A stretch of 64,000 nucleotides of DNA, taken from IMG/VR virus record IMGVR_UViG_3300028840_001395, positions 248,001 to 312,000 of that record. The stretch is one strand, 5' to 3'. Below the pieces are notes generated by a model. That model had not been told where the DNA came from and searched no databases. It saw only the letters and a program-made list of their open reading frames with translations. Position 1 is the first letter of the stretch. Every line of letters begins with the position of its first letter. Shown piece by piece: positions 2,276 to 58,765 of this stretch. Made by a program: the position numbers and the translations under genes.

Positions 2276-3067
2276 TCAGGCGCAGCGCTTGATGGTGTCG
2301 AGCAGGTCGTCGGTGGCGACGAAGCCCTGCTTGACCGCCTCGGCAGCCGCCGTGCCACCGGCCCGCAGGATGAAGTCCGTGCCCGGCTCCAGCCTGTAGG
2401 ACACGTAGCGCCGCACCGGCAGCTTGCTGCGGAGCAGGCCCTTGGCGACCGTCTTGGCCTTCGACTTGGCCTTCGGCACCGGGCCGTTCGGGGCCGGGGT
2501 GATGACCGTCTCGTGGATCTTCAGCCCCTGGAGGTAGATGGTGCCCGGCAGCGGGGCCTTGGCCTCGCCGGGGTTGCACTCGCGGCACTGGCAGTTGGCC
2601 TTGCCGCTGCACTTGTAGACCCGCGCTCCCCGGACGGGCTCGCCGTCGAGGGTCAGGCCGTCGAACACGTCCTGGGTGGTGGAGGTGGACTCGGCGTTGG
2701 GGTCGAGCGTCCGCTCGAAGCTGGCGACCAGCTCGTCCCGCGCCGCCGTGAAGTCGGCCAGCGTCAGGGCGTTGCCCTTGCCGTCCACGATGCCCTTGGC
2801 GGTCGCGTCGGCCAGGGCGGCGTCGAGGTCGGCGTCCCGCACCTGCTCCAAGGAGCGGCGCACCAGGTTCTCGTAGCGGAAGCCGGTCAGGATGACGACG
2901 TGAACCTCGTCGTCACCGTAGGTCTTCCGGGCCGCGCCCCGCCCGCGCTCCGTGCCGCGCTTGCGGGTGATGAGGCCGGTGAAGGTGCCCTTGCGGGCGT
3001 CCTTGAGCAGCAGGCCGAGCAGGTCGGAGTTGCTGTTGCTGCGGGCCGTGCGAGTCGTCGTTGCCAT
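2276..3067 (-). CDS. Hypothetical early protein
   Basis: 263-aa ORF, AAGGAG RBS, CxxxxxCxCxxC cluster, class I promoter upstream. Confidence 0.7.
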   Translation of the reverse strand: MATTTRTARSNSNSDLLGLLLKDARKGTFTGLITRKRGTERGRGAARKTYGDDEVHVVILTGFRYENLVRRSLEQVRDADLDAALADATAKGIVDGKGNALTLADFTAARDELVASFERTLDPNAESTSTTQDVFDGLTLDGEPVRGARVYKCSGKANCQCRECNPGEAKAPLPGTIYLQGLKIHETVITPAPNGPVPKAKSKAKTVAKGLLRSKLPVRRYVSYRLEPGTDFILRAGGTAAAEAVKQGFVATDDLLDTIKRCA

Positions 3068-3092
3068 CTTCGTTCTCCTTTCGTCCTCACCT

Positions 3093-3121
3093 AGACTACT
3101 CTGGCCCAGACCGAAATAAGA
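3093..3121 (-). promoter_or_regulatory. Class I promoter TCTTAT-N17-TAGTCT
   Basis: gtcttatttcggtctgggccagagtagtctag on the minus strand. Confidence 0.8.
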
Positions 3122-3178
3122 CCGTCCTAAGACGGTTTTTTCTTTCTAAGGAACGCGCGTCCCGCGTAGAGAAAAGGG

Positions 3179-3207
3179 TCTTATCTCGGCCCACCACAGA
3201 GTAGTCT
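3179..3207 (+). promoter_or_regulatory. Class I promoter TCTTAT-N17-TAGTCT driving the structured RNA
   Basis: tcttat ctcggcccaccacagag tagtct; divergent partner of 3093..3121. Confidence 0.8.
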
Positions 3208-3212
3208 AGGTG

Positions 3213-3902
3213 AACGGGGAGCGAAGCATAGAGGCAAGCTCCCAAGCTCTGTGAGAAGTCAAGACTATGGGCGGCTTGGAGGGCTCGGTAGGCGGCTCCG
3301 AAAGGGGTAACCTCCGCCGGTTGCAACCTGGACGGGGTACCGAGTCGAGGGTTCAATTCCACTCCCGCTCACACACGAAGAAGTCGGTGCCCCGAGGGGG
3401 TGCCGATAGGATAGACTGCCAGAGGCTTCAACCAAGGAGGGTTCAGCCGATGGGCTAGAGTCAGCCCTACGATGTCCCTGAACTGGTCCTGGGGCATCGT
3501 GGAAAGACGCTCACCACCCTTGAGGAGAGCGTCCTGGGCAACGAGGTTCAGGGGCCTCCCGGAACCCCCCGAGGCCAGCTTGCAATGGGCGAGCTGGGGC
3601 TGGTACTCGGGCCGGGGGGATGGTATAGACCAGGCAAGGTTGACAGCTCCGGCCCCAACCCTCGGCGGAGGGATTCGAGCACGGACGACGCTAGGCCCGC
3701 TCTGCGTGGATGTCGCGTGACAGTCGGCTCGATACCCGGTGATGTGCGAGGCCCAAGTCGAGTGAACGGTGCCGAGACTAGCGGCACCCTCACTTGCACC
3801 CCCGAAGCGGACTGGAGTAGAGTGACCCCATGATCTTCGCACTCATCGGAGCCGACTTCCAACGGACGTTCGCGCGGGTTACGCCCGCGCCCGTTGGAGG
3901 TC
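3213..3902 (+). ncRNA. Candidate large structured ncRNA or long structured leader (~690 nt), family unassigned
   Basis: Own promoter; no credible ORF; more than 10 helices found by eye (3217-22/3238-43, 3268-74/3365-71, 3283-90/3338-45, 3383-3407, 3469-78/3491-3500, 3506-12/3527-33, 3575-83/3589-97, 3722-30/3849-57, 3768-74/3782-88, 3854-65/3891-3902); T-loop GGTTCAATTCC. Confidence 0.65.
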
Positions 3903-3905
3903 AAC

Positions 3906-4253
3906 ATGGCACGAGGAATCGCGTTTCGTAGGCACCACACCCATCGGGTCTGCCACAACCGCCGAACCCTTCACCTGGCCCTCATGTCGGATCTGACTGA
4001 GGCTGACATCGGACGGTGGGGTTACCCCACCTGGTACGACAAACGGTGTCTCTTCGGGTGCAACTGCTCGGCCAAGACTCCGGGCCGTCCCCGCCGGGGT
4101 CATGGGGTTTGTCGCACGGGTCAGCGGGATCGCATCTACAACTGGCGTCGTGAGGCCGTCCGCATCGGTCATCTGTCTCGGTTCTACTCGGGTGTGGACT
4201 GGGACTCGGATGAGGTGGTGCTGGCTACTTCGGGGACTGACTACAGCTACTGA
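3906..4253 (+). CDS. Small basic Cys/His-rich protein
   Basis: GGAGG RBS, then MARGIAFRRHH...CLFGCNC...GHGVC. Confidence 0.6.
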   Translation: MARGIAFRRHHTHRVCHNRRTLHLALMSDLTEADIGRWGYPTWYDKRCLFGCNCSAKTPGRPRRGHGVCRTGQRDRIYNWRREAVRIGHLSRFYSGVDWDSDEVVLATSGTDYSY

Positions 4254-5300
4254 TCACTTCAGGGTGATGTAGGTGTAGATGTTGCTCTTCTCGCCATCGT
4301 GGACATCGACGCTCTTGATCTTGTCCTTGAAAGGCCGCAGGGCCGGATCGAGCTTGGAGTGGTACCGCTTGAGTTCCTCCTCGACCATCTCCTGATACCG
4401 CTGCCACCCATACTCGGACTCACCCTCCTTGGGGAGCCAGTCGGAGCGATACCCACCCTCGATCCTGAGATTGTCCTTCGAGATGGTGGTCTCGTGACGA
4501 CTCCAGGACATTCCCATGTCATCGGTGATGCGCTTCAGGACGGCTGCGATGGCCTGTGCCGTTTCCGCCCGAGCAGCAGTGGCATCGGCTTCGCCCTTCA
4601 TTCCAGGCCAGCCCCGAAGCAACTCAAGGAAGTTCAGGGCGACAGCCTTGGCGTCCTTGACAGTGGCCGCACCCATGCGGCCCACGTTCATCTGGAGGCC
4701 TTCCTTCTGGCCCGTGTTCTCCCAGACGGTGAGCTGTGCCGGAATCCCGTGGGACTGGTGCTCGTCAATGCGGAAGGTGACCAGGAAGGTGTGACCCGGC
4801 CCGCCGTAGCGGTAGTGCCCCTCGGGCTTCTGCCAGGCTTCGATCTGGAGCTTCTTCGGGTCAACGAGCTTTGCCTTGATCATGCGAGCCGCTGCAGCGG
4901 TGACCTTCTTCAGCGCCGGAGGCATCTGCTTCTTGGAGAGCCTCTGGATCATCTTGGTCGCGTCGGTGACGTGCTTCTGGAATCGCTTCACCATCGTCTG
5001 AGCGTCACGGAGAGCCCTCGCAGCCGTCTTGTCCTCGGGATAGGCTGCGATGACCTCTTCGACGCTTTGGAGAACGCCCTGCGCCGCCTTGAGGCCCGCC
5101 CTGGCCTTCTTGAGCGCATCCAACTGGGAACGCACGTCGGCATCCCCGGCAGCCATCTTGTAGTGCAGGCCGAAGGTGTCGGTCACCTCCTCGATGTTCT
5201 GGGACAGCTCATCGAGGGTGTCGAGCGTATCGAGCAGCTTCCCCATGTTGGGGAGCGCCGCCTGCTTGGCGACCCATCGAGCGGCGACGCGCTTCTTCAT
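4254..5300 (-). CDS. Putative virion/internal protein with N-terminal RVAARW motif
   Basis: True start MKKRVAARWVAKQAA after GGGAAG; helical N-half. Confidence 0.65.
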   Translation of the reverse strand: MKKRVAARWVAKQAALPNMGKLLDTLDTLDELSQNIEEVTDTFGLHYKMAAGDADVRSQLDALKKARAGLKAAQGVLQSVEEVIAAYPEDKTAARALRDAQTMVKRFQKHVTDATKMIQRLSKKQMPPALKKVTAAAARMIKAKLVDPKKLQIEAWQKPEGHYRYGGPGHTFLVTFRIDEHQSHGIPAQLTVWENTGQKEGLQMNVGRMGAATVKDAKAVALNFLELLRGWPGMKGEADATAARAETAQAIAAVLKRITDDMGMSWSRHETTISKDNLRIEGGYRSDWLPKEGESEYGWQRYQEMVEEELKRYHSKLDPALRPFKDKIKSVDVHDGEKSNIYTYITLK

Positions 5301-22783: not shown

Positions 22784-22803
22784 CTCTCACCTCCGTCCTA
22801 CAT

Positions 22804-22864
22804 AGACTACTCTGTCGCGCCCCGAAATAAGACAGTCTTATTTTACCGCCCCCCGGAGTAGTCT
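22804..22864. promoter_or_regulatory. Back-to-back class I promoters (minus 22804-22832; plus 22836-22864)
   Basis: Both read TCTTAT-N17-TAGTCT. Confidence 0.8.
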
Positions 22865-22871
22865 AGGTGTG

Positions 22872-28049: not shown

Positions 28050-29318
28050 CTAGAACAGGGAAAGGACAGATTCCTCTGTATCTTCGTCAGCTTCAGGGGC
28101 CGGACGGCCCGTCAGCCGGGCTCTGGCAAGCTCCAGATACTCGGGATTGAGGTCGATGCCGATGTAATCTCTTCCGTGCCGAAGGGCGACCATCCCCGTG
28201 GTGGCCGACCCACTGAAGGGGTCGAGGACGATGCAGCGTGCGGTGGGGTGGCTCCCGCACTCGCAGGTCGGCTCCCAGTGGTAGGTCTTCTTCCGCAGGC
28301 CGTCGAGGATGCGCCGCTTCACGTCGCTGGGGTTCTCGGCCCCGGTGCCCTCGTAGTCCTTCACGGCCTGTCCGGCGTAGCCGCCGGACTTGTCGGCCCC
28401 GCACGCCTTCTTGTGGGCCTCGTCGGGGTCGCCCTTGGTCACGATGCGCTGCCAGGGCGCTCCACAGGCTGCACACGCGCCAACCTCGCTGGTCCCGGCC
28501 AGAATCATCGGTTCGACTAGCTCGGGAGGCCAGACGGCGAAGTGAGCGCCCTTGTAGGGTCGGGGGTTGACGTTCCAGACGGTTCTCTTGTTGCGACCCT
28601 GGCTCGTGTTCCACTGGGAGAACCCGCCGTCCTTGGCGTTGCGGTTCCCGCACCCCTTCTGCTCGTTGCGGGCGGCTCGCTGGCGCTGCCAGTCGGGGTT
28701 GTTCTCCCTGCCCCACGAGGAGGACTCCCTGATGGCCTCCTGGTCGTAGAAGTAATGCTGATTCTTGGTCAAGAGGAACACGTACTCGTGGGCCTTAGTT
28801 GGGCGATCCCGCACCGCCTCTGGCATCACGACATTTTTCGCCCAGATCACGTCACTCCTCAAGTACCAGCCATCCTCTTGGAGGGCGAAGGCGACACGCC
28901 AGGGGATGCCCACCAAGTCCTTCGGCTTGAGGCCCGGTGCCTTTCCCCCACTGCGGTTCTGATAACGGTCGTCCACCTGCTGGAACCCACTCGACTTGCC
29001 GCCGGGGTGGCCTCCGTCCCGCCCGGCGTTGTACGAGTCACCCAGGTTCAACCAGACGGTGCCATCGTCGCGGAGGACCCGCCTGACTTCGCGGAACACA
29101 CTGACCAGGTTCTCCACGTACTCCTTGGGCGTCTCCTCCAACCCAAGCTGGCCCTCGACGTTGTAGCTCCTCAACCCCCAGTAGGGTGGAGAAGTGCAGA
29201 CCGTGTGGACATGCTTGTCGGGGAGGTACTTGAGACCCTCGATGACATCGAGCCCGTAGAGCAAGTCGGCGCTGGGCGGGTTATCCCCGAGAGGGTATTC
29301 GACAGTCTCGGGCTTCAT
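28050..29318 (-). CDS. Beta-class N4-C/N6-A DNA methyltransferase
   Basis: TSPPY (motif IV), RVLRDDG, HFAVWP, VLDPFSGSATT (motif I), IGIDLN; Zn-ribbon insertion. Confidence 0.92.
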   Translation of the reverse strand: MKPETVEYPLGDNPPSADLLYGLDVIEGLKYLPDKHVHTVCTSPPYWGLRSYNVEGQLGLEETPKEYVENLVSVFREVRRVLRDDGTVWLNLGDSYNAGRDGGHPGGKSSGFQQVDDRYQNRSGGKAPGLKPKDLVGIPWRVAFALQEDGWYLRSDVIWAKNVVMPEAVRDRPTKAHEYVFLLTKNQHYFYDQEAIRESSSWGRENNPDWQRQRAARNEQKGCGNRNAKDGGFSQWNTSQGRNKRTVWNVNPRPYKGAHFAVWPPELVEPMILAGTSEVGACAACGAPWQRIVTKGDPDEAHKKACGADKSGGYAGQAVKDYEGTGAENPSDVKRRILDGLRKKTYHWEPTCECGSHPTARCIVLDPFSGSATTGMVALRHGRDYIGIDLNPEYLELARARLTGRPAPEADEDTEESVLSLF

Positions 29319-30598
29319 GTCAGGAACTCCAGCACGTTGGGTTCATCGTCCTCTTCCTTGACCTTCTCGGGAGCAGCCCGTTCCTGCAGCCTGGCTGTCG
29401 CCAGAGCGAGATACTCGGCGTTGATGTCGATGCCGATGTAGTTGCGACCTTGCTTCATGGCCACAAGCCCCGTCGTGGCCGACCCGCTGAAAGGGTCGAG
29501 CACGGTGCAGGGGATCGTGTGGGCGTCGCACTTGCAGGAGGGCTTCCAACCCACCGTTCGGGCATCATAGCCAACCATGCTCTGACCACCCGGGATTGCC
29601 GACTTGTGACGTGAATAGGTCGGCCCATGTAGCTCCTTGCGGTCGTCGGTGACCACCGGGTTGTGACCCTTGATCCTCTTCTTCTCGATGACCCTCACCC
29701 TCGGAGCACCACAGGATGAGCAGCAACCCTCCTCGCTCGACCCAGCCAGAATCATCGGTTCCACGAGCTTCTCGGGCCAGGTGGCGAAGTGCGACCCCTT
29801 GTAGGGCTTCGGGTTCACTGTCCAGACCGTCCTCTTGTTGCGCCCGCCGGGAGGATGGAATCCCGTGGCTCCCCCCCGCAGCAGACTGGTCTTGCCCGCC
29901 TGCCCTTCATACTGGGAATCGAGTACGGCAGCATCTTCGATCTTGCGGTCACTCCAGCGGTTGAACTTGTGTGGTTCCTTGATGGCATCCTGGTCGTAGA
30001 AGTATCGCTCGTTCTTCGTGAGGAGGAACACGTACTCGTGAGATTTGGTTGGGCGATCCCGAACGGACTCTGGCATCACGGCGTTCTTCGCCCAGATGAC
30101 ATCCGACCGGAGGTACCAGCCGTCCGCCCGAAGGGCGAAGGCGACCATCCAAGGGATGCCCACCAGGTCTTTCATCTTCATCCCAGCCGGGACAGGTGGG
30201 CGCTGGGTTTTGGTGTACTGGGTCTTGACTGTCTCGGCGTACCGGGTCGAACCGGACTTCACCCCGTCGAGCCCGCACTTCGTCCCCATGTTGCCGGTCG
30301 GAGTGGAGACATAGGAGTCGCCCAGGTTCAACCAGACGACCCCATCGTCACGGAGGACTCGCCGGACTTCCCTGAACACCGAGACCAGATTCTCGACATA
30401 CTCCTGGGGTGTCTCCTCTAGCCCAAGCTGACCCTCGACGTTGTAGCTGCGAAGGCCCCAGTAGGGCGGAGAGGTCGCTACCATCTGAACAGACTGGTCA
30501 GGAAGGAGCCGGAGGGCCTCACGGACATCGATGCCGTAGTAGAGCTTCGACTGGGGCGCGTCATCGCCAAGTGGATATTCTACGATGACAGGTTTCAT
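29315..30598 (-). CDS. Beta-class N4-C/N6-A DNA methyltransferase (tandem paralog)
   Basis: TSPPY, HFATWP, VLDPFSGSATT, IGIDIN. Confidence 0.92.
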   Translation of the reverse strand: MKPVIVEYPLGDDAPQSKLYYGIDVREALRLLPDQSVQMVATSPPYWGLRSYNVEGQLGLEETPQEYVENLVSVFREVRRVLRDDGVVWLNLGDSYVSTPTGNMGTKCGLDGVKSGSTRYAETVKTQYTKTQRPPVPAGMKMKDLVGIPWMVAFALRADGWYLRSDVIWAKNAVMPESVRDRPTKSHEYVFLLTKNERYFYDQDAIKEPHKFNRWSDRKIEDAAVLDSQYEGQAGKTSLLRGGATGFHPPGGRNKRTVWTVNPKPYKGSHFATWPEKLVEPMILAGSSEEGCCSSCGAPRVRVIEKKRIKGHNPVVTDDRKELHGPTYSRHKSAIPGGQSMVGYDARTVGWKPSCKCDAHTIPCTVLDPFSGSATTGLVAMKQGRNYIGIDINAEYLALATARLQERAAPEKVKEEDDEPNVLEFLT

Positions 30599-45824: not shown

Positions 45825-45853
45825 GCTTATTTACCCCCGCCGGGGAGTAGTCT
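45825..45853 (+). promoter_or_regulatory. Class I promoter GCTTAT-N17-TAGTCT
   Basis: Motif copy before the RBS of 45869. Confidence 0.8.
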
Positions 45854-45868
45854 GGGTGAGGAGGGTCA

Positions 45869-52884: not shown

Positions 52885-54327
52885 TCAATCATCATCCCCC
52901 CAGCCGAACATCGAGTCGAGAGACTCCATCTCGGGCTTCTCCACCGTCCGGTCCGAGACGATCTCCGGGCTGTCGCCCACGATGCCACCTCGGGCCTCGC
53001 GCTCCCAGTGCCGGACCCTGGAATCTGCGATCTCCAGATACTCCTCCTCGCGCTCGATGCCGATGAAGTCGTGGCCAGTGAACACGCACGCCAGGGCCGT
53101 CGTCCCGCTGCCCATGAACGGGTCGAGCACTGGCCCCTCGTTGGTCGGGACATCTTCCAAGAGCCGCCGCATCAGGCCGAGAGCTTTCACGGTCGGATGG
53201 AAGTTCTTGACGCGCTCCGCTGTCCGCCCGGCCCCCGCCGCAGGGCATTCCAGTCCATCTGAGCCCTCTTGCCGGTCAAAGCACGCCTCGGCCCCCGTCT
53301 TCCCGGCCAGGTGGTCACAGCCCGCTTCGCGCTCGCTGCGGGCTGCCTTGGCGACATAGTGGAAGCCGTCCGGCTCATCTACCCACAGGATGGAGTCTCG
53401 GATCTCGAAACCGGCGTCCTCGATCATGCAGGCTCCGGTGTGGCCTGTGGGCTCGTCATCGGGAGCGACGAGCATCAGGTGTCCGCCGGGCCGGAGGACA
53501 CGGAGGAACTCCTCGATCTGCTTCTCGGTCGGCTCGCCTTTGACCAGCAGCCCCGTGACGGACTCCTTGGCCCACTCGCCCGTATCGTAGTCGGTGCTGT
53601 CCAGGTCGAGGAACATCGCTCTGGGAGCAGGCTCTGGTGGGGAGATCATCGTCAGCAGGTAGTCGATCATCTCCTGTGGCATCTTACTCATCTCTGCTCC
53701 TTGGACTTGCCGGTAGAACCGGCTCGCGCCGCCCTCATCATCATACCCGACCATCCCACCATGCCGGGTCGTGATGCTCCCCCAGCCGTCGTATCCCTTG
53801 AAGTTGCTCTTGATGTGATGAGGCTTGCAGCCTTCGCGAGGCCCACTCTGATCATCCAGCACGACAATGAGGCACTCGGGATGACACTCCCAGGCGGGGA
53901 CTTCTTCGAGGCCGTTCTCGTCCGAGTATCCTCGACGGGTCGCCTCGGTTGGACGGAATCGCCATTGGCTCTTATCCGCCCGTCCGGCATCCCCTTCGGG
54001 TCGGGTGTCTACCCGGATGCCCTTGACCTTCTTCGTCCCGACCTGACGACACTCGGGCCGGTGTTGCAGAATCACATTCGGGGGCCAGCGGCCCTTCGAC
54101 CCACACCGCTCCTGGACTTCCTCGGCACTCATCGCGTGGATGCGGAAGGTGCTCTCCCCCTGGTAGCCCTTGGTGCCGTCAGCCCCCGACTTGTACCAGC
54201 CGGGGATGTCATCGGGGTCACGGCCAACCCGGCTGGCATCGATGTTCAGCCCCCCAGCTTCGTGGCGCAGCACGTTGTCTGCGACCGACCCGATCAAGGG
54301 CTTGCGGGCCAGGGCGATGGTCCTCAC
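52885..54327 (-). CDS. MTase cassette 4 fused to a SAM-binding subunit lacking the catalytic DPPY
   Basis: N-part LARKPL...GRWPPNV...GGASRFY; internal AAGGAG plus ATG at 53691; C-part RVLRPGG, IEDAGFEIRD, HPTVK, VLDPFMGSGTT, FIGIE; motif IV reads LVKGEP. Confidence 0.8.
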   Translation of the reverse strand: MRTIALARKPLIGSVADNVLRHEAGGLNIDASRVGRDPDDIPGWYKSGADGTKGYQGESTFRIHAMSAEEVQERCGSKGRWPPNVILQHRPECRQVGTKKVKGIRVDTRPEGDAGRADKSQWRFRPTEATRRGYSDENGLEEVPAWECHPECLIVVLDDQSGPREGCKPHHIKSNFKGYDGWGSITTRHGGMVGYDDEGGASRFYRQVQGAEMSKMPQEMIDYLLTMISPPEPAPRAMFLDLDSTDYDTGEWAKESVTGLLVKGEPTEKQIEEFLRVLRPGGHLMLVAPDDEPTGHTGACMIEDAGFEIRDSILWVDEPDGFHYVAKAARSEREAGCDHLAGKTGAEACFDRQEGSDGLECPAAGAGRTAERVKNFHPTVKALGLMRRLLEDVPTNEGPVLDPFMGSGTTALACVFTGHDFIGIEREEEYLEIADSRVRHWEREARGGIVGDSPEIVSDRTVEKPEMESLDSMFGWGDDD

Positions 54328-54842
54328 GACTCGTCCTGCGTCTGCTTGTAGAAGCGAGATGTGTCGTCCTGGTCATCCAGCGCAGCTACGGGACAACACT
54401 CATCGCACTCCCATGCTTCGACCACCTCAAGTCCATCTGCGTCGGCGTAGTCAGTGCCCTCCCGCTCGACACCGCCCCCATAGGCCCCCGTCCCTCCCAG
54501 GCTGGTCTTGCTGTGATGATGGTTCACGCTGGTCGGGACCCGCTTCTCACCGACGCACACGCACTCGGGACGGTGGTGCAGAATCACGTTCGTCGGCCAG
54601 CGCCCACCTTCATGTTGCTGGCTCCGGTAGTCGTCGCCCTCTGGAGAGGCGTTGAACACCCGGCGCTCTGTGTGCAGGCCGGGGTTGGTCTGACACGTCT
54701 GGTTGCTCGACCCCCACACCCCTGCGCCCTTGGCACCACGGACTCGGCTGGCATCGATGTTCAGTCCGCCCGTCGAATGTCGAAGGACGTTCTCCGCGAC
54801 AGAACCGACGAGGGGCTTCCGGGCCAGGGTAATGACCCTCAT
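54324..54842 (-). CDS. Stand-alone MTase variable cassette 3
   Basis: MRVITLARKPL..SVAENVL...GGLNIDASRV...GRWPTNV.LHH.PEC...WEC..C.CPV..LDDQ...SRFYKQ. Confidence 0.8.
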   Translation of the reverse strand: MRVITLARKPLVGSVAENVLRHSTGGLNIDASRVRGAKGAGVWGSSNQTCQTNPGLHTERRVFNASPEGDDYRSQQHEGGRWPTNVILHHRPECVCVGEKRVPTSVNHHHSKTSLGGTGAYGGGVEREGTDYADADGLEVVEAWECDECCPVAALDDQDDTSRFYKQTQDES

Positions 54843-55363
54843 GATCTCTTGACCTGCTTGAAGAAGCGGGAGGCTCCTCCTTCATCAGCAAACCCTCGGA
54901 CGCTCGTATCCCTGACCTCATTTGGATTCCAGGTCATCGAGACACCGGATGTTGGATAGATCGCTCGTCCTGTAGGTTGCCGGACAGTCCCTTTGATCTC
55001 CCCACTCTGGTCATCCAGGGCATCAACGGGGCATCCATCCTCGCACTCCCAGTCGGGAACCTCCTCAAGCTCCGAGTCGCCCAGTTGCGTGACCTTCTTC
55101 GTCCCGACGACCTGGCACGCGGGCTTGTGCTCCAAGATGACGTTCGCCGGGAAGCGACCCACTCGCTGCTCGTTGATTCTGTCGATGGGATAGAAGGAGT
55201 TCTTCGGGCCGTAGTATCGCTCCCCACCACCCTTGATCAGCACGTCCTTGACTCCGATGCGGCAGGCCCCGATGTTCAGCCCACCCGTGCCGTAATTCAA
55301 CACATTCTCGGCTACGCTCCCCCCCTTGGGGAGAGGCTTGCGGGCCAGGGTGATCACTCTCAT
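54839..55363 (-). CDS. Stand-alone MTase variable cassette 2
   Basis: MRVITLARKPL...GRFPANV...WECEDGCPV..LDDQSG...GGASRFFKQV. Confidence 0.8.
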   Translation of the reverse strand: MRVITLARKPLPKGGSVAENVLNYGTGGLNIGACRIGVKDVLIKGGGERYYGPKNSFYPIDRINEQRVGRFPANVILEHKPACQVVGTKKVTQLGDSELEEVPDWECEDGCPVDALDDQSGEIKGTVRQPTGRAIYPTSGVSMTWNPNEVRDTSVRGFADEGGASRFFKQVKRS

Positions 55364-55847
55364 TCCTTGACCTGCTTGAAGAAGACAGAGGTGACATCCC
55401 CGCTCTGGTCGTCCAGAGCCAGGACGGGACAATCCGGATGGCACTCCCAGGCTTCGACTTCCTCCTCTACTTGATCGATGATTTCCGTCTTGGGAGGCTC
55501 ACCGCCATAGTCAATCTTGACAACCTTCTCGGTTAACTTGACGGTCTTGGTTCCGACACAGATACAGTCAGGATGGTGTTCCAATAGAGCATTCGGAGGC
55601 CAACGCCCCATGACACTCTCGGGCCAACCAGGAGGGGGTCTCCGTGGGAGGTTTCCCCACTTTGGCACTTTCCTTTGTCTCCATGTCCTCGACACGTCTC
55701 GGGCCAGTAGGAGCACTGAGTACCCCCACCTTTTTTCCCTACCCGGCAACCATCGATATTCAAGGCCCCCACGTCTCTCTTGAGCACGTTATCGGTGATC
55801 GAGGAATCCTTCGGGAGAGGCTTCCTAGCCAGGGTGATTACTCTCAC
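55360..55847 (-). pseudogene. MTase variable cassette 1, frameshifted near 55636
   Basis: First half (LARKPL...LNIDGCRV) in ORF 55533..55847; second half (GRWPPN...WECHPDCPV...FFKQV) in ORF 55360..55749. Confidence 0.7.
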
Positions 55848-58765
55848 CTCGCTTCCAGTTCCTTCATGTCATCTTCGTCCAGGGCATCGCCCACGGATTC
55901 CTTCTGCTCCGTGGTCATCGGCACCTCGTAGCACGTCAGGATGCGCCGACAAGGCCACTCTACCCGTGAGAGGAACATCTCAAAGGGCTTCTGGTCACGC
56001 GATTTCAGGCACTGGAACTGAACACGGTTCTGGTCACGGAGGTCATCATCGACCCAGGAGGAAGTCACAATGTCAGCCGAGTTGTGCGACAACAACGGCC
56101 CCGTCTGATACTCGTGATCCCCCTCCACCTCCAAGTCCATGACCGGAGCATCAATCCCGGTGTCCCGAACCGACTCAACCTGCATTACCTGAAGCTCCAA
56201 GAGCTTTTCCAGGAACCGCGTATCCTCGTTGTCGATGCCATCCTCGGTGGCTGCCTGGAGAAGCGTCTCAATAGCCCCGCGAGGCACAAGACCCGTCCGC
56301 TTGACCTTCCGGGGGTTGTTGTAGAACGCCCGCTTGAAGCGCGTCTGCGGACTCCCAGGGGGGTGGATGAGCTTGTAGACCCGCAGGAACGTCTCGGGAA
56401 CCGGGTAGACCTGCTTGTCACAGGGGGTCTGCTTGAGCGAGTCCCACACCAGACCCATCTTGGCATCTTCAGTGAAACCGATCTTCTCCAAGAATCTCCG
56501 ACGACCCTCACGGGAGACCACCCGCAACGTGTAACCGCCGTAGGTCTTCCCGGTCTTCTTCAAGGAGGTCTCGTTGTAAGACAGGTGGGAGTCGATACCA
56601 AGACCCGTCAGGAGCATCTGAATCTGACGGAGGAAGGACTCACTCGCCTCCTTCATCTTGAGGCCAATGATGTTGTTCTTGTTGACCCACCCGTCCGTGT
56701 CGAAAAGACCCCGCAGGTAGGCGCATACCGTGCTCTCTGTCCCTTGCAGGATGCACTCCGGGACATCTCCTGCCCGCTGACCAGCGACCTGCTCGAACCA
56801 TCGCTTCAAGGGCTTCGACCACTTCACCAGATCGAAAGACCCAGGGCGAGAGGGGCTTTCCAGGAGAGGAAGCTCGTGACCGAACGTGGCCTGGAAGGCG
56901 TACCGGATGGCTTCCCGAACCTGCATCTCCAGCCGGTTCCCAGTCCACGCGAGACCGCCCGAATGAACCTTCCCATCACCATCCCACGCGCCGAGGAGGT
57001 AGGCTAAGGTGGGGGTGGTGGAGAATGGGGCGTCCAGTTCACCCTCCCCCTTCCGACCCACCAGGGTCTCATACCTCCCAGCTTCAAGATCCGGGAGCCG
57101 GGTATCCTCTTGCGCCCATCGAGAGCCCCCCTGGGACGATGCAAGATAATCCTCAGAGGTCAAATCCCGAACAGCCTTCCATCCCAACAACCCGTCCTGA
57201 ACCACCCGGACGCGATGGGGGGCAGTAGCCTCCAGGATGGAACCCCGACTGGTCTTGACCTCCCAGATACGCCGAACGCCGTTATCGAACTTGTTCAGCA
57301 CCTTCTTCCACCCACCGGAAGACCACACCGAATCCCCGATACTTATGTCCCCGATGTTAATGTAACCCCTCAAAGAAGTGACGTAAGTGCTTGAAATCCT
57401 TACACAACGCTCTGCCTCGTTAGCGTAGCTCAAATGGGTCAGGTCGTAGCTCGCCGTGCCGGTCTTCTCCTTGCGCTTGGTCGCGGCCTTGTAGCCCTCA
57501 CGGTTGATCTGGAACAAGGCGATGACGGCCATGCCCATTCCCCGCTGGAAGCTCATCGCCAGGCGCTTGCAGTCACGGATGATCTCATTGAGGCGTTCCG
57601 TCGTGCTCGACACCCACTTGCGAGGGGCCATCAGCCCAACGTGGTCGATGTAGATGGACGAGAACGGAGACTTCGAGTAGACCAACTCGGCCCGGTGCCG
57701 GAGGTCAGCCATCGTGAAGTCGGCCTTGTCCGGGTCAGCGACCTCGATGTGGATCTTGCCGAAGTTCCGGGGGTCGGGCCACGGGGTGTTGTTCTCGGAG
57801 TCGAGGGTGTGAACCATCTGCTTGCCCATGAAGTCTGGCTTTACGAAATCCGCCAGGAACTTCTTGGCGTTCGGATGGAACTCATCCAGCGTGCCGTCTC
57901 GGACGTTCGTGTAGGGCAAGCCCACGCTGTCGTTGGGGTGCTTCTGCAAGCCCAGCTTGTAGCGGATCTCCTTGAACTTGGGATGCTGGCTGTGCATGGC
58001 GAACAAGATGCGACGGCATTGCTGGTAGGGCATCTCCAGGGAGAAGATCAGGCTGCTGTGGTTGTAGAGGATGGCCTGGTTGTAGGCCCAGTTGAGCATG
58101 AACGTGGACTTCAACCCACCCGTGAACCCCGCGTGTATCCACAGCTCGTTCCGCTTGGCTCCGTTGAGGGCGGAGTCCATCTGGGTCAGGCCCGTGTGCT
58201 GGCCAATGCCCGCCAGGGGATCAGCCTCGACCCGCTCATACTCCGCCATGAAATCCTCGCCGTCCTGGGTGACTTCGCCCGAGAGGCGACCACCAAGCGT
58301 CGGGGCCACGATGTCGTGGCTCTCATCGAGGATGTGGTGAATGGCGGCATACGGCCCCTGAATGACCTTCTCTTCCTTGCCGTCCGTGACCTTGATGCCC
58401 TTGCCCAGGATGTCCGCTGCCTTCTTGAGAAGCTCGCTCACGGCCCGGACGCGGCGCTCCTCGGCTTTGGCTTCGAGGCGGGTCTTGAAGTTGCCGTCGA
58501 TCAGGACGGGAAGAACCTCAAGGGCCTTGACCCGGTTGACGACCGTTTCTTCCTTCTTGATGGTGAAGTGGGTGACTATGGCGTTGATCTCGGGCACATG
58601 GTTGTGCGTCTGGACGAACTCCTGGATGAACGTCCAGATGATCACGTCGTCGGGAACATCGAACTCCAGCCGGGACTCATGCAGAATCCTGAAGTTCCGC
58701 AGGAGGTGGGTGGCGTCGTCGTCCTTGGCGTTGACGATGAACGTGGAACGCAGGAGGGACTTCAC
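55844..58765 (-). CDS. dnaB: DnaB-like replicative helicase with intein
   Basis: TGLTQMD, Walker A GFTGGLKST, FSLEM, IYIDHVGLM, QINR, LKSRD. Confidence 0.9.
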   Translation of the reverse strand: MKSLLRSTFIVNAKDDDATHLLRNFRILHESRLEFDVPDDVIIWTFIQEFVQTHNHVPEINAIVTHFTIKKEETVVNRVKALEVLPVLIDGNFKTRLEAKAEERRVRAVSELLKKAADILGKGIKVTDGKEEKVIQGPYAAIHHILDESHDIVAPTLGGRLSGEVTQDGEDFMAEYERVEADPLAGIGQHTGLTQMDSALNGAKRNELWIHAGFTGGLKSTFMLNWAYNQAILYNHSSLIFSLEMPYQQCRRILFAMHSQHPKFKEIRYKLGLQKHPNDSVGLPYTNVRDGTLDEFHPNAKKFLADFVKPDFMGKQMVHTLDSENNTPWPDPRNFGKIHIEVADPDKADFTMADLRHRAELVYSKSPFSSIYIDHVGLMAPRKWVSSTTERLNEIIRDCKRLAMSFQRGMGMAVIALFQINREGYKAATKRKEKTGTASYDLTHLSYANEAERCVRISSTYVTSLRGYINIGDISIGDSVWSSGGWKKVLNKFDNGVRRIWEVKTSRGSILEATAPHRVRVVQDGLLGWKAVRDLTSEDYLASSQGGSRWAQEDTRLPDLEAGRYETLVGRKGEGELDAPFSTTPTLAYLLGAWDGDGKVHSGGLAWTGNRLEMQVREAIRYAFQATFGHELPLLESPSRPGSFDLVKWSKPLKRWFEQVAGQRAGDVPECILQGTESTVCAYLRGLFDTDGWVNKNNIIGLKMKEASESFLRQIQMLLTGLGIDSHLSYNETSLKKTGKTYGGYTLRVVSREGRRRFLEKIGFTEDAKMGLVWDSLKQTPCDKQVYPVPETFLRVYKLIHPPGSPQTRFKRAFYNNPRKVKRTGLVPRGAIETLLQAATEDGIDNEDTRFLEKLLELQVMQVESVRDTGIDAPVMDLEVEGDHEYQTGPLLSHNSADIVTSSWVDDDLRDQNRVQFQCLKSRDQKPFEMFLSRVEWPCRRILTCYEVPMTTEQKESVGDALDEDDMKELEAR
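56081..57406 (-). mobile_element. Intein with LAGLIDADG endonuclease in DnaB (442 aa)
   Basis: AER|CVRIS ... ATAPHRV ... YLLGAWDGDG, YLRGLFDTDG ... LLSHN|SAD. Confidence 0.92.

What the first reader, a model, noticed from the sequence alone, without database searches (positions are those of the whole stretch)
3213..3902. Unassigned ~690-nt, promoter-driven, densely structured RNA
Seen: this is the longest gap in a gene-packed genome. It starts right after a class I promoter and folds almost end to end: more than 10 stems, many with G-U pairs (which implies strand-specific RNA selection), a GAAA tetraloop at 3300, a long-range helix 3722-30/3849-57, and a possible pseudoknot CCCTGAAC 3476-83 / GTTCAGGG 3546-53 using a hairpin loop. 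Known: phages carry large ornate RNAs (GOLLD, ROOL). I do not see RNase P, group I or group II intron signatures. Inference: a new large ncRNA class, possibly partnered by the basic Cys/His protein at 3906..4253.
Basis: partly seen in the sequence, partly recalled or inferred. Interest (0 to 1): 0.8.

Follow-up and report, generated by a model that had tools for sequence, protein, structure and literature searches.

The report
New large structured phage leader RNA
A 436-kb phage from sediment carries an undescribed, intricately folded RNA of about 690 bases between a phage promoter and a small basic zinc-type protein gene; it is conserved in five or six related phages, but its function is unknown.

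Summary
Window 3068-3905 is the longest non-coding gap in this piece of a 435,804-bp phage contig. It lies just downstream of a promoter motif that recurs five times in the window. Its + strand is a conserved structured RNA.

Five to six related phage lineages keep it in the same place. A curated set of 86 base pairs is 97% canonical, 10 of the pairs covary on both sides, and G-U cells outnumber A-C cells 50 to 3. Indels are not multiples of three and no ORF is conserved. Rfam, ARAGORN and a purpose-built covariance model find no known family and no further copy.

The RNA is composite:
- a 5' hairpin;
- a variable peripheral domain of 80-325 nt;
- a core of about 400 nt with a covariation-supported pseudoknot and a 36-nt invariant stretch;
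- a 3' hairpin that pairs with the Shine-Dalgarno sequence of the 115-aa gene.

That 3' hairpin is older than the rest. It precedes homologous genes in distant phages that lack the core.

My best reading is a lineage-specific RNA module that works with the co-transcribed small protein. Function is inferred, not shown. Interest is moderate to high.

The parts
3087..3123 (-). Leftward copy of the phage promoter motif, driving the 263-aa gene operon. It is the inverted partner of 3177-3213.
   Evidence: (inverted repeat I1, 37 nt, 81% complementary)
3177..3212 (+). Rightward promoter: a GTCTTAT box, a 17-nt spacer, then TAGTCT within AGAGTAGTCTAGGTG. The start of transcription is inferred at about 3213-3215.
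   Evidence: Motif found 5 times in the window against 0.2 expected. Invariant in 5 lineages. A related motif is present in L030 and L060.
3213..3902 (+). The whole structured RNA, which is the 5' leader of the 115-aa gene. It is 553-792 nt in relatives.
3216..3243 (+). 5' hairpin P1 (GGGGAGC ... GCUCCC).
   Evidence: Kept in all lineages. L008 has GAGGGC/GCCCUC instead, a compensatory change.
3246..3255 (+). 5' strand of a long-range helix with 3841-3851 that closes the RNA in the window's minimum-energy fold. Only GUGAG/CUCAY is kept in relatives, and it does not covary.
   Evidence: weak
3256..3434 (+). Variable peripheral domain: about 80 nt in L004 and about 325 nt in L003, L007 and L011. 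It holds the GNRA hairpin at 3296-3307 and a T-loop-like hairpin at 3347-3364 that only the window has.
   Evidence: The long version has 83 predicted pairs, 10 of them covarying.
3436..3458 (+). GGAGG (3436-3440), 9 nt, then AUG GGC UAG (3450-3458): a Shine-Dalgarno-like box with a two-codon mini-ORF. It is kept in all lineages although L004 replaced the spacer.
   Evidence: meaning unknown
3452..3501 (+). Hairpins Pa (3452-3456/3463-3467) and Pb (3468-3474/3495-3501). The 20-nt loop of Pb is almost invariant.
   Evidence: Pb has 35/35 cells paired, 1 covarying pair and 2 one-sided changes.
3506..3554 (+). Hairpin Pc (3506-3512/3527-3533), whose loop 3517-3524 pairs with 3547-3554: an H-type pseudoknot.
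   Evidence: 8 bp, 40/40 cells paired, 3 covarying pairs. The outer pair of Pc changes A-U to C-G.
3555..3619 (+). Three-helix domain: Pe (3555-3562/3612-3619), Pf (3568-3573/3606-3611) and Pg (3575-3583/3589-3597).
   Evidence: Pg has 1 covarying pair; Pe has 3 G-C/G-U changes.
3659..3672 (+). Hairpin Ph (CCCUC/GAGGG), invariant.
3675..3732 (+). Central domain: helices Pj (3675-3680/3727-3732) and Pk (3684-3686/3723-3725 and 3688-3691/3715-3718). They enclose most of a 36-nt stretch (3692-3727) in which only 3 positions vary (3714, 3716, 3718). The fold of that stretch is unresolved.
   Evidence: Pj and Pk2 each have 2 covarying pairs. An alternative RNAalifold fold of this domain shows almost no covariation.
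3759..3796 (+). Hairpin Pl (3759-3765/3790-3796 and 3769-3774/3782-3787) with the conserved loop GACUAG. The loop could kiss the Pb loop (CUGGUCC).
   Evidence: The kissing contact does not covary (34/35 cells paired).
3854..3902 (+). Translational operator. The apical hairpin is 3872-3879/3883-3890. The basal helix, 3854-3859 with 3897-3902 (extended by 3860-3866/3892-3898 in the window), buries GGAGG at 3896-3900.
   Evidence: z = -5.9. The same architecture precedes the homologous gene in L030, L060 and L063, and more weakly in L059, with a different basal-helix sequence.
3906..4253 (+). Gene for a 115-aa basic protein with an Arg-rich N-terminal helix, the motif C-x-C ... G-x-C, and DWDSDE near the C-terminus. 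It is an orphan family.
   Evidence: No Pfam, PHROG, NCBIfam, PDB or fold match.

Best explanation
**Shown.** Window 3213-3902 (+) is transcribed territory behind a conserved phage promoter. It encodes no protein. Selection acts on it as a folded RNA.

It is a composite of four parts:
- a 5' hairpin;
- a variable peripheral domain;
- a core of about 400 nt with a pseudoknot and an invariant stretch;
- at the 3' edge, a hairpin that base-pairs with the Shine-Dalgarno sequence of the 115-aa gene.

This last part is an older translational operator shared by the whole small-protein family. The core and the peripheral domain are a lineage-specific addition. They sit in a variable 'cargo slot' between promoter and operator. 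In other phages that slot is nearly empty or holds small ORFs.

**Inferred mechanism.**
- The small Arg-rich zinc-type protein binds the conserved apex of the operator hairpin. This locks the ribosome-binding site shut, giving autogenous translational repression.
- Because the operator is the 3' edge of the big RNA, the same contact tethers the protein to the RNA. The two then act as an RNA-dominated ribonucleoprotein.
- The cellular target is unknown.
For: **The RNA is real.**
- Synteny holds in 5-6 lineages.
- Core nucleotide identity is 0.67-0.83. That is similar to codon positions 1+2 of the flanking genes and above position 3, which is 0.56-0.76.
- RNAalifold predicts 119 pairs, 13 with compensatory changes.
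- The curated 86 pairs are 97.0% canonical against 94.6% in shuffles (0 of 1000 reach the observed value). They have 10 covarying pairs against 5.2 (3 of 1000). Slid controls give only 36-46% paired.
- G-U cells outnumber A-C cells 50 to 3.
- The 5' domain has 10 more covarying pairs.

**It does not encode a protein.**
- There is no conserved ORF. The ORF from the conserved ATG at 3472 is 82 aa in the window but 16-25 aa in three lineages.
- Indels of 1-2 nt lie inside conserved blocks.

**The operator.**
- There is no promoter or terminator between the RNA and the gene.
- The operator folds with z of -4 to -6.4 in 7 of 9 loci.
- Its apex CGGGU-NNN-GCCCG is kept while the basal helix changes sequence.

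**The cargo slot.**
- L030 has a 35%-identical protein, the same operator, and a leader of only about 130 nt.
- The slot holds ORFs in L059, L060 and L063.

**The protein.** It has a confident helical model (pLDDT 83) with an Arg-rich N-terminal helix.
Against: - No transcript data exist: no RNA-seq run was listed.
- Protein binding is untested. The complex prediction was not run by the tool.
- The protein family is far wider than the RNA, so the protein does not depend on it.
- The core has no second copy of the operator apex.
- With only 5-6 related sequences, the covariation statistics can be inflated by shared ancestry.
- The fold of the invariant central stretch is unresolved.
- Free-energy z-scores do not separate the strands in relatives.
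Confidence: 0.45

Rival explanations
1. Autonomous RNA. The core is an independent non-coding RNA or ribozyme that merely uses the promoter of this operon. It is released by processing and acts in trans, unrelated to the 115-aa protein. GOLLD and ROOL are comparable cases.
For: - Its size and complexity exceed those of known cis-regulators.
- The operator works without it in L030.
- The same slot carries unrelated cargo ORFs in relatives.
- It has a modular variable 5' domain.
- A long-range helix may close the inserted RNA into a self-contained unit.
Against: - No terminator or recognisable processing site lies before the gene.
- No antisense target was found in the window.
- It is never found away from this gene.
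Confidence: 0.25
2. Cis-acting sensor. The core is a very large riboswitch-like or protein-sensing leader. It switches the operator open or shut and so controls translation of the 115-aa gene.
For: - The RNA and the gene form one transcription unit.
- The Shine-Dalgarno sequence is buried in a conserved helix.
- The invariant stretch 3701-3713 plus 3723-3727 could pair with 3852-3856 plus 3866-3878, which includes the 5' arm of the operator. This nested 13 + 5 bp alternative would free the ribosome-binding site.
Against: - The alternative pairing does not covary. A 13-bp G-U-rich helix is expected about 0.5 times by chance in a sequence of this size and G+C content (my estimate).
- No known aptamer matches.
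- A 400-nt sensor for one 115-aa gene has no precedent.
Confidence: 0.2
3. Ribosome-engaging RNA. The conserved GGAGG plus AUG-NNN-UAG mini-ORF loads ribosomes, and the RNA senses or perturbs termination at UAG.
For: - The mini-ORF and its Shine-Dalgarno-like box are kept in all lineages, even where the spacer was replaced.
- In distant relatives the homologous small-protein gene is followed by a truncated RF1-like gene.
- Huge phages are known to encode release factors (PMC7162821).
Against: - The same bases lie in or beside helix Pa and may be conserved for structure alone.
- No RF gene was found in the window.
- Stop-codon use is ordinary.
Confidence: 0.07
4. DNA-level element, such as a replication origin, a packaging site or a protein-binding array, rather than an RNA.
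For: It is a long conserved non-coding stretch beside divergent promoters.
Against: - Pairing is strand-asymmetric, with 50 G-U cells against 3 A-C cells.
- Compensatory changes are present.
- There are no direct repeats or iterons.
- There is no A+T-rich segment or skew change.
Confidence: 0.02
5. A protein-coding gene that was missed, or a decaying pseudogene.
For: ORFs of 82 and 157 aa exist in the window.
Against: - The ORFs have no codon periodicity.
- They are not conserved.
- Non-3n indels lie in conserved blocks.
- There are no family hits.
- The window's stop-codon use shows no sign of recoding.
Confidence: 0.01

Closest known systems
GOLLD and ROOL (large ornate RNAs often carried by phages; RNA-only assemblies seen by cryo-EM, doi 10.1101/2024.12.08.627333)
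   Same: - An RNA of about 550-800 nt carried by a phage.
- Many helices and a pseudoknot.
- A conserved part next to a variable part.
- Function unknown.
   Different: - No match to their covariance models, even at E up to 10.
- It is part of an mRNA leader with a translational operator at its 3' edge.
- It is not next to tRNA genes.
- It is known from only 5-6 lineages.
HEARO / omega RNA of IscB
   Same: A large structured RNA lying immediately 5' of, and co-transcribed with, the ORF whose product it is proposed to bind.
   Different: - The protein has 115 aa and no nuclease domain.
- There is no Rfam HEARO match.
- Nothing suggests a transposon or a guide segment.
Autogenous translational operators of small RNA-binding proteins (T4 gene 32 and regA, the lambda N leader, ribosomal-protein leaders; from general knowledge)
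   Same: A hairpin just upstream of the start codon occludes the Shine-Dalgarno sequence. It lies in front of a small basic protein and is conserved wherever the gene occurs.
   Different: - Binding by the protein is not shown.
- The operator is only the last ~50 nt. The other ~640 nt have no counterpart in those systems.
Bacterial RNase P (a ~380-nt RNA plus a ~119-aa basic protein; from general knowledge)
   Same: The size ratio is similar: a large conserved RNA core with a small, very basic protein.
   Different: - No match to the RNase P models.
- The protein has no detectable relationship to any solved structure.
- The RNA is a leader, not a separate gene.
Riboswitch and T-box leaders
   Same: A structured 5' leader whose 3' end controls access to the ribosome-binding site.
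   Different: - About two to three times larger.
- No known aptamer match.
- Mutually exclusive folds are only conjectural.

Membership tests
Any Rfam 15 family (including GOLLD, ROOL, HEARO, OLE, raiA, RNase P, tmRNA, group I and II introns, riboswitches) | A match to the family's covariance model at or near its gathering score. | tested here: not met
   There were no matches at gathering score in the window. At E up to 10 on 3000-4300 only three chance hits appeared, at 16-20 bits against cut-offs of 40-128. Nothing was found in the leaders of four relatives.
tRNA / tmRNA | A cloverleaf or tRNA-like domain with an acceptor stem; for tmRNA also a tag reading frame. | tested here: not met
   ARAGORN finds none in the window or in L003, L004, L007, L011 and L030. 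The T-loop-like hairpin at 3347-3364 is specific to the window lineage.
Structured non-coding RNA (general) | Conserved base pairs with compensatory changes, and strand-specific G-U pairs. | tested here: met
   One central domain is inconclusive.
Structured non-coding RNA (general) | No conserved reading frame. | tested here: met
Structured non-coding RNA (general) | Evidence of transcription. | not testable with these tools
   No RNA run was listed. Only the promoter motif and strand asymmetry argue for transcription.
Shine-Dalgarno-occluding translational operator | A stable hairpin whose stem contains the Shine-Dalgarno sequence of the next gene. | tested here: met
   GGAGG at 3896-3900 lies inside the helix 3854-3866/3892-3902. 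The fold has -35.8 kcal/mol and z = -5.9.
Shine-Dalgarno-occluding translational operator | Kept in front of homologous genes, with the stem changing in sequence but not in pairing. | tested here: met
   Seen in L030, L060 and L063, and more weakly in L059. The proteins there are only 33-37% identical to the window's.
Shine-Dalgarno-occluding translational operator | A repressor binds the hairpin. | not testable with these tools
Riboswitch | A ligand-binding aptamer plus mutually exclusive folds of an expression platform. | tested here: inconclusive
   An alternative 13 + 5 bp pairing with the operator arm exists but does not covary and could be chance. No known aptamer was found.

The most novel reading that the evidence does not exclude
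The core could be the RNA subunit of a new RNA-dominated ribonucleoprotein or ribozyme of huge phages that acts on translation. Three observations point that way:
- a conserved GGAGG plus AUG-NNN-UAG start-stop element;
- an obligatory small Arg-rich zinc-type protein partner;
- a genomic slot that in distant relatives holds a truncated RF1-like release factor.

Together these would fit an RNA that captures ribosomes, or senses termination at UAG, during infection.
Probability: 0.1. Interest if true: 0.85.

Novelty: new variant of a known kind. Interest (0 to 1): 0.6.

Why it matters
Conserved bacterial or phage RNAs longer than 400 nt with complex folds are rare. Those that have been explained turned out to be ribozymes, guide RNAs or self-assembling cages.

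This one adds an unrelated family from uncultivated huge phages of sediments and estuaries. It has a clear promoter, defined borders and a candidate protein partner, so it can be made in vitro and tested directly.

The work also uncovers two further things:
- an orphan family of small proteins (at least 120 clusters) that always carries the same translational operator;
- a link between that family, in distant phages, and truncated release-factor genes.

Tried and rejected
**Searches for relatives or known families**
- DNA similarity to 50,697 deposited phage genomes, near and distant modes: no match.
- Exact-pattern scans with conserved RNA segments.
  - IMG/VR returned only the source contig, plus one chance 22-mer in L058.
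  - JGI metagenomes returned the source and one known relative.
  - GTDB genomes returned 8 hits that are chance 19-mers. The best, L050, lies inside a 465-aa ORF.
- The GC hairpin pattern in IMG/VR returned unrelated terminators and coding hits.
- nhmmer and a covariance model of 3656-3804 were run against more distant huge-phage loci and the whole window: no further copies.

**Structural and functional alternatives**
- Iterons: none found.
- Antisense targets in the window: none.
- A regulon of operator hairpins: the apex motif is unique to this site.

**The small protein**
- Language-model look-alikes gave WD40 noise, which I discarded.
- The first AlphaFold model, from 7 sequences, was too poor to use.
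- The second, from 78 sequences, is confident but matches nothing in PDB, AFDB clusters or BFVD.

**Steps that gave nothing**
- Protein-RNA complex prediction was not folded by the tool.
- Two protein-profile scans of IMG/VR for the small-protein family failed.
- Reads from two DNA runs showed only fragments of relatives already in hand.

Full report
**Source and setting**

The window is part of IMGVR_UViG_3300028840_001395, a 435,804-bp viral contig. DNA runs that hold it come from sediment, seawater and estuary metagenomes.

The window encodes typical huge-phage functions:
- a family A DNA polymerase;
- a DnaB helicase interrupted by an intein;
- an SNF2 helicase;
- methylases;
- beta-helix fibre-like proteins.

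All three stop codons are used (TGA 36, TAG 16, TAA 4), so there is no sign of recoding. No deposited phage genome resembles the locus at the DNA level.

**Check of the observation**

*The gap.* Real genes here have GC3 of 0.7-0.98 and GC2 of 0.3-0.5. The ORFs inside 3096-3842 are flat (0.61/0.51/0.60 and 0.66/0.59/0.66), and sliding windows show no codon periodicity from about 3100 to 3900. The 838-nt gap between the 263-aa gene (ends 3067, minus strand) and the 115-aa gene (starts 3906) is the largest in the window.

*The promoter.* The gap begins with two inverted copies of a motif, a GTCTTAT box, 17 nt, then TAGTCT inside AGAGTAGTCTAGGTG.
- The motif occurs five times in 64 kb against 0.2 expected.
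- At the other copies a start codon follows within about 5-15 nt.
- A fragment from a relative shows the same arrangement.
- Only here do 690 nt intervene.
- No further promoter-like or terminator-like site lies between 3213 and 3906.

**Relatives**

The 115-aa protein has five close relatives at 68-77% identity. Every contig that carries one has the same arrangement: the 263-aa gene on the minus strand, a gap of 690-930 nt, then the small gene. The gaps align.
- The promoter is invariant.
- The 3' ~470 nt are well conserved.
- The 5' ~80-325 nt are variable, with whole sub-domains gained or lost.

Core nucleotide identity (0.67-0.83) equals that of codon positions 1+2 of the flanking genes. 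It exceeds their third positions, which are 0.56-0.76. The region is therefore under purifying selection.

It is not coding.
- Indels of 1 and 2 nt lie inside conserved blocks.
- The only ORF that starts at a conserved ATG (3472) is 82 aa in the window and 119 aa in L003, but 16-25 aa in three other lineages.

**Structure**

RNAalifold on seven sequences predicts 119 pairs, 13 with compensatory double changes.

I curated 14 helices (86 pairs) from an exhaustive list of conserved stacks. Across five distinct lineages they behave as follows:

| Measure | Curated helices | Control |
|---|---|---|
| Cells that form a standard pair | 97.0% | 94.6% in column shuffles (0 of 1000 reach the observed value) |
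| Pairs covarying on both sides | 10 | 5.2 (3 of 1000) |
| Covariation score | 0.195 | 0.147 (0 of 1000) |
| Paired after sliding the partner 1-3 columns | - | 36-46% |

A further 15 pairs change on one side only.

There are 50 G-U cells against 3 A-C cells, so the + strand is the functional one. The long 5' domain of L003, L007, L008 and L011 adds 83 predicted pairs, 10 of them covarying.

*Caveats.*
- There are only 5-6 related sequences, so shared ancestry inflates such statistics.
- For the central domain an alternative RNAalifold fold shows almost no covariation (1 pair; shuffles 51 of 500). The fold of the 36-nt near-invariant stretch 3692-3727 is therefore unresolved.
- Free-energy z-scores are modest and do not separate the strands in relatives.

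The GAAA hairpin at 3296-3307 is real. It has GCAA in two relatives.

GTTCAGGG (3546-53) does take part in a pseudoknot. Its partner is 3517-3524, in the loop of hairpin 3506-3533 (8 bp, all cells paired, 3 covarying pairs).

The helix 3722-30/3849-57 forms in the window. It is only partly kept elsewhere and clashes with covarying helices.

**Known families**

Nothing matches.
- Rfam 15 gives no match at gathering score. At E up to 10 on the locus there are three chance hits.
- The leaders of the relatives give nothing.
- ARAGORN finds no tRNA or tmRNA.

Searches for further copies also failed. Exact-pattern scans of IMG/VR, JGI metagenomes and GTDB genomes, an HMM, and a covariance model of 3656-3804 found no copies beyond the known lineages. 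The hits in bacterial genomes are chance 19-mers.

**The 3' end is something else, and older**

The last ~50 nt fold into a very stable hairpin (-35.8 kcal/mol, z = -5.9). Its basal stem contains the GGAGG of the 115-aa gene.

A more distant phage, L030, is informative.
- Its small protein is 35% identical to the window's, and its genome has a much lower G+C content.
- It has the same divergent neighbour and promoter motif.
- Its leader is only about 130 nt and ends in almost the same hairpin.

An exhaustive profile search shows that the small protein belongs to an orphan family of at least 120 clusters.
- The family has no Pfam, PHROG, NCBIfam or PDB relative.
- A confident AlphaFold model (pLDDT 83) matches no known fold.

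In the three further members whose contigs I could read (L059, L060, L063), the start codon is again preceded by an apical hairpin, CGGGU-NNN-GCCCG. In L060 and L063 this sits on a basal helix that buries the Shine-Dalgarno sequence; in L059 the basal helix is weak (z = -1.0). The basal helix has a different sequence in each.

This is the signature of a translational operator recognised at its apex by a conserved factor. The only component that always travels with it is the protein itself.

**The slot**

The content between promoter and operator differs among phages:

| Lineage | Content of the slot |
|---|---|
| Window clade | The 553-792-nt RNA |
| L030 | About 130 nt |
| L060 | An unrelated 360-nt leader plus a 70-aa ORF |
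| L063 | Two ORFs |
| L059 | An 82-aa ORF lies upstream; the 933-nt contig is too short to show a promoter |

The L060 leader shows no similarity to the window RNA apart from the operator. The core is therefore a lineage-specific insertion into a variable cargo position, not an ancestral part of the gene's control region.

**Interpretation**

*Shown.* This is a real, new, strand-specific structured RNA of composite build, expressed as the leader of the small-protein mRNA. It ends in a conserved operator that occludes the Shine-Dalgarno sequence.

*Inferred.* The protein binds the operator apex and represses its own translation. Being tethered to the 3' edge of the RNA, it then works with the RNA as a ribonucleoprotein (confidence about 0.45).

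*Rivals.*
- An autonomous RNA or ribozyme processed from the leader (0.25).
- A very large cis-acting sensor that opens the operator (0.2). A nested 13 + 5 bp alternative pairing between the invariant stretch and the operator's 5' arm exists but does not covary.
- A ribosome-engaging RNA built around the conserved GGAGG plus AUG-NNN-UAG element (0.07).
- A DNA element or a missed gene. Both are disfavoured.

**Comparison with known systems**

In size and ornateness the RNA resembles GOLLD and ROOL (doi 10.1101/2024.12.08.627333). In position it resembles the HEARO/omega RNA upstream of iscB. It is a member of neither, because the model matches fail. Its 3' hairpin works like classic autogenous translational operators. 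I file it as a new variant of known kinds at the level of system type, and as a new family at the level of sequence and structure.

**What could not be done**
- No RNA-seq run was listed.
- The rest of the 436-kb genome was not available to search for further copies or for release-factor genes.

Noticed in passing
L060 3374-4057; L063 1411-2104; L025 6155-6650: In distant relatives the homologous small-protein gene is followed directly by a truncated RF1-like release factor (PCRF + RF-1 domains, 215-227 aa, lacking domain 1; the prfA model scores 2.9e-58 but below its cut-off). In L025 the RF-like gene follows the divergent promoter region with no small-protein gene detected. In L063 and L025 the N-terminal ~37 residues lie in a different frame from the rest, as in the programmed +1 frameshift of prfB.
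   Followed up: partly
window 3436-3458: GGAGG, a spacer of 9-11 nt, then AUG-NNN-UAG (Met-Gly-stop; Met-Cys-stop in L004). This is kept in all lineages although L004 replaced the spacer. It could be a start-stop ribosome-loading element or simply part of helix Pa.
   Followed up: partly
window 3087-3213, 22799-22869, 45843-45858: A phage promoter motif (GTCTTAT box, 17 nt, then AGAGTAGTCTAGGTG), twice as divergent pairs. The gene at 22869/22873 would be nearly leaderless. Variants of the motif occur in L030 and L060, and possibly in L063.
   Followed up: partly
window 55844-58765 (-): A DnaB-like helicase gene interrupted by an intein with a LAGLIDADG homing-endonuclease domain.
   Followed up: no
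window 53800-55850 and 28050-30598: Two sets of repeated genes: four to five diverged tandem copies of a ~500-bp unit (small minus-strand genes next to a methylase), and two adjacent paralogous ~425-aa genes that are 74-80% identical in DNA.
   Followed up: no
window 2276-3067 (-) and L001 877-1656: The 263-aa neighbour belongs to a large family of huge-phage proteins: more than 200 clusters, on contigs up to 536 kb, with a conserved C-x-C-R-x-C motif and no annotation. The phage carries a second paralogue about 3.5 kb further left. In L060 it is that paralogue which sits next to the small-protein gene.
   Followed up: partly
L060 2344-2700: A second long (about 360 nt) non-coding leader lies behind the same kind of promoter in a distant huge phage. 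Its sequence is unrelated to the window RNA. Only identical copies were available, so its structure could not be tested.
   Followed up: partly
window 3347-3364: A T-loop-like hairpin, GAGGG-UUCAAUU-CC(A)CUC, in the variable domain. It is present only in the window's lineage, and ARAGORN does not call it a tRNA.
   Followed up: yes
window 3906-3984: The public gene call for this phage starts the small protein at Met27 (89 aa). All relatives support the upstream ATG at 3906, which has a GGAGG box (115 aa).
   Followed up: yes
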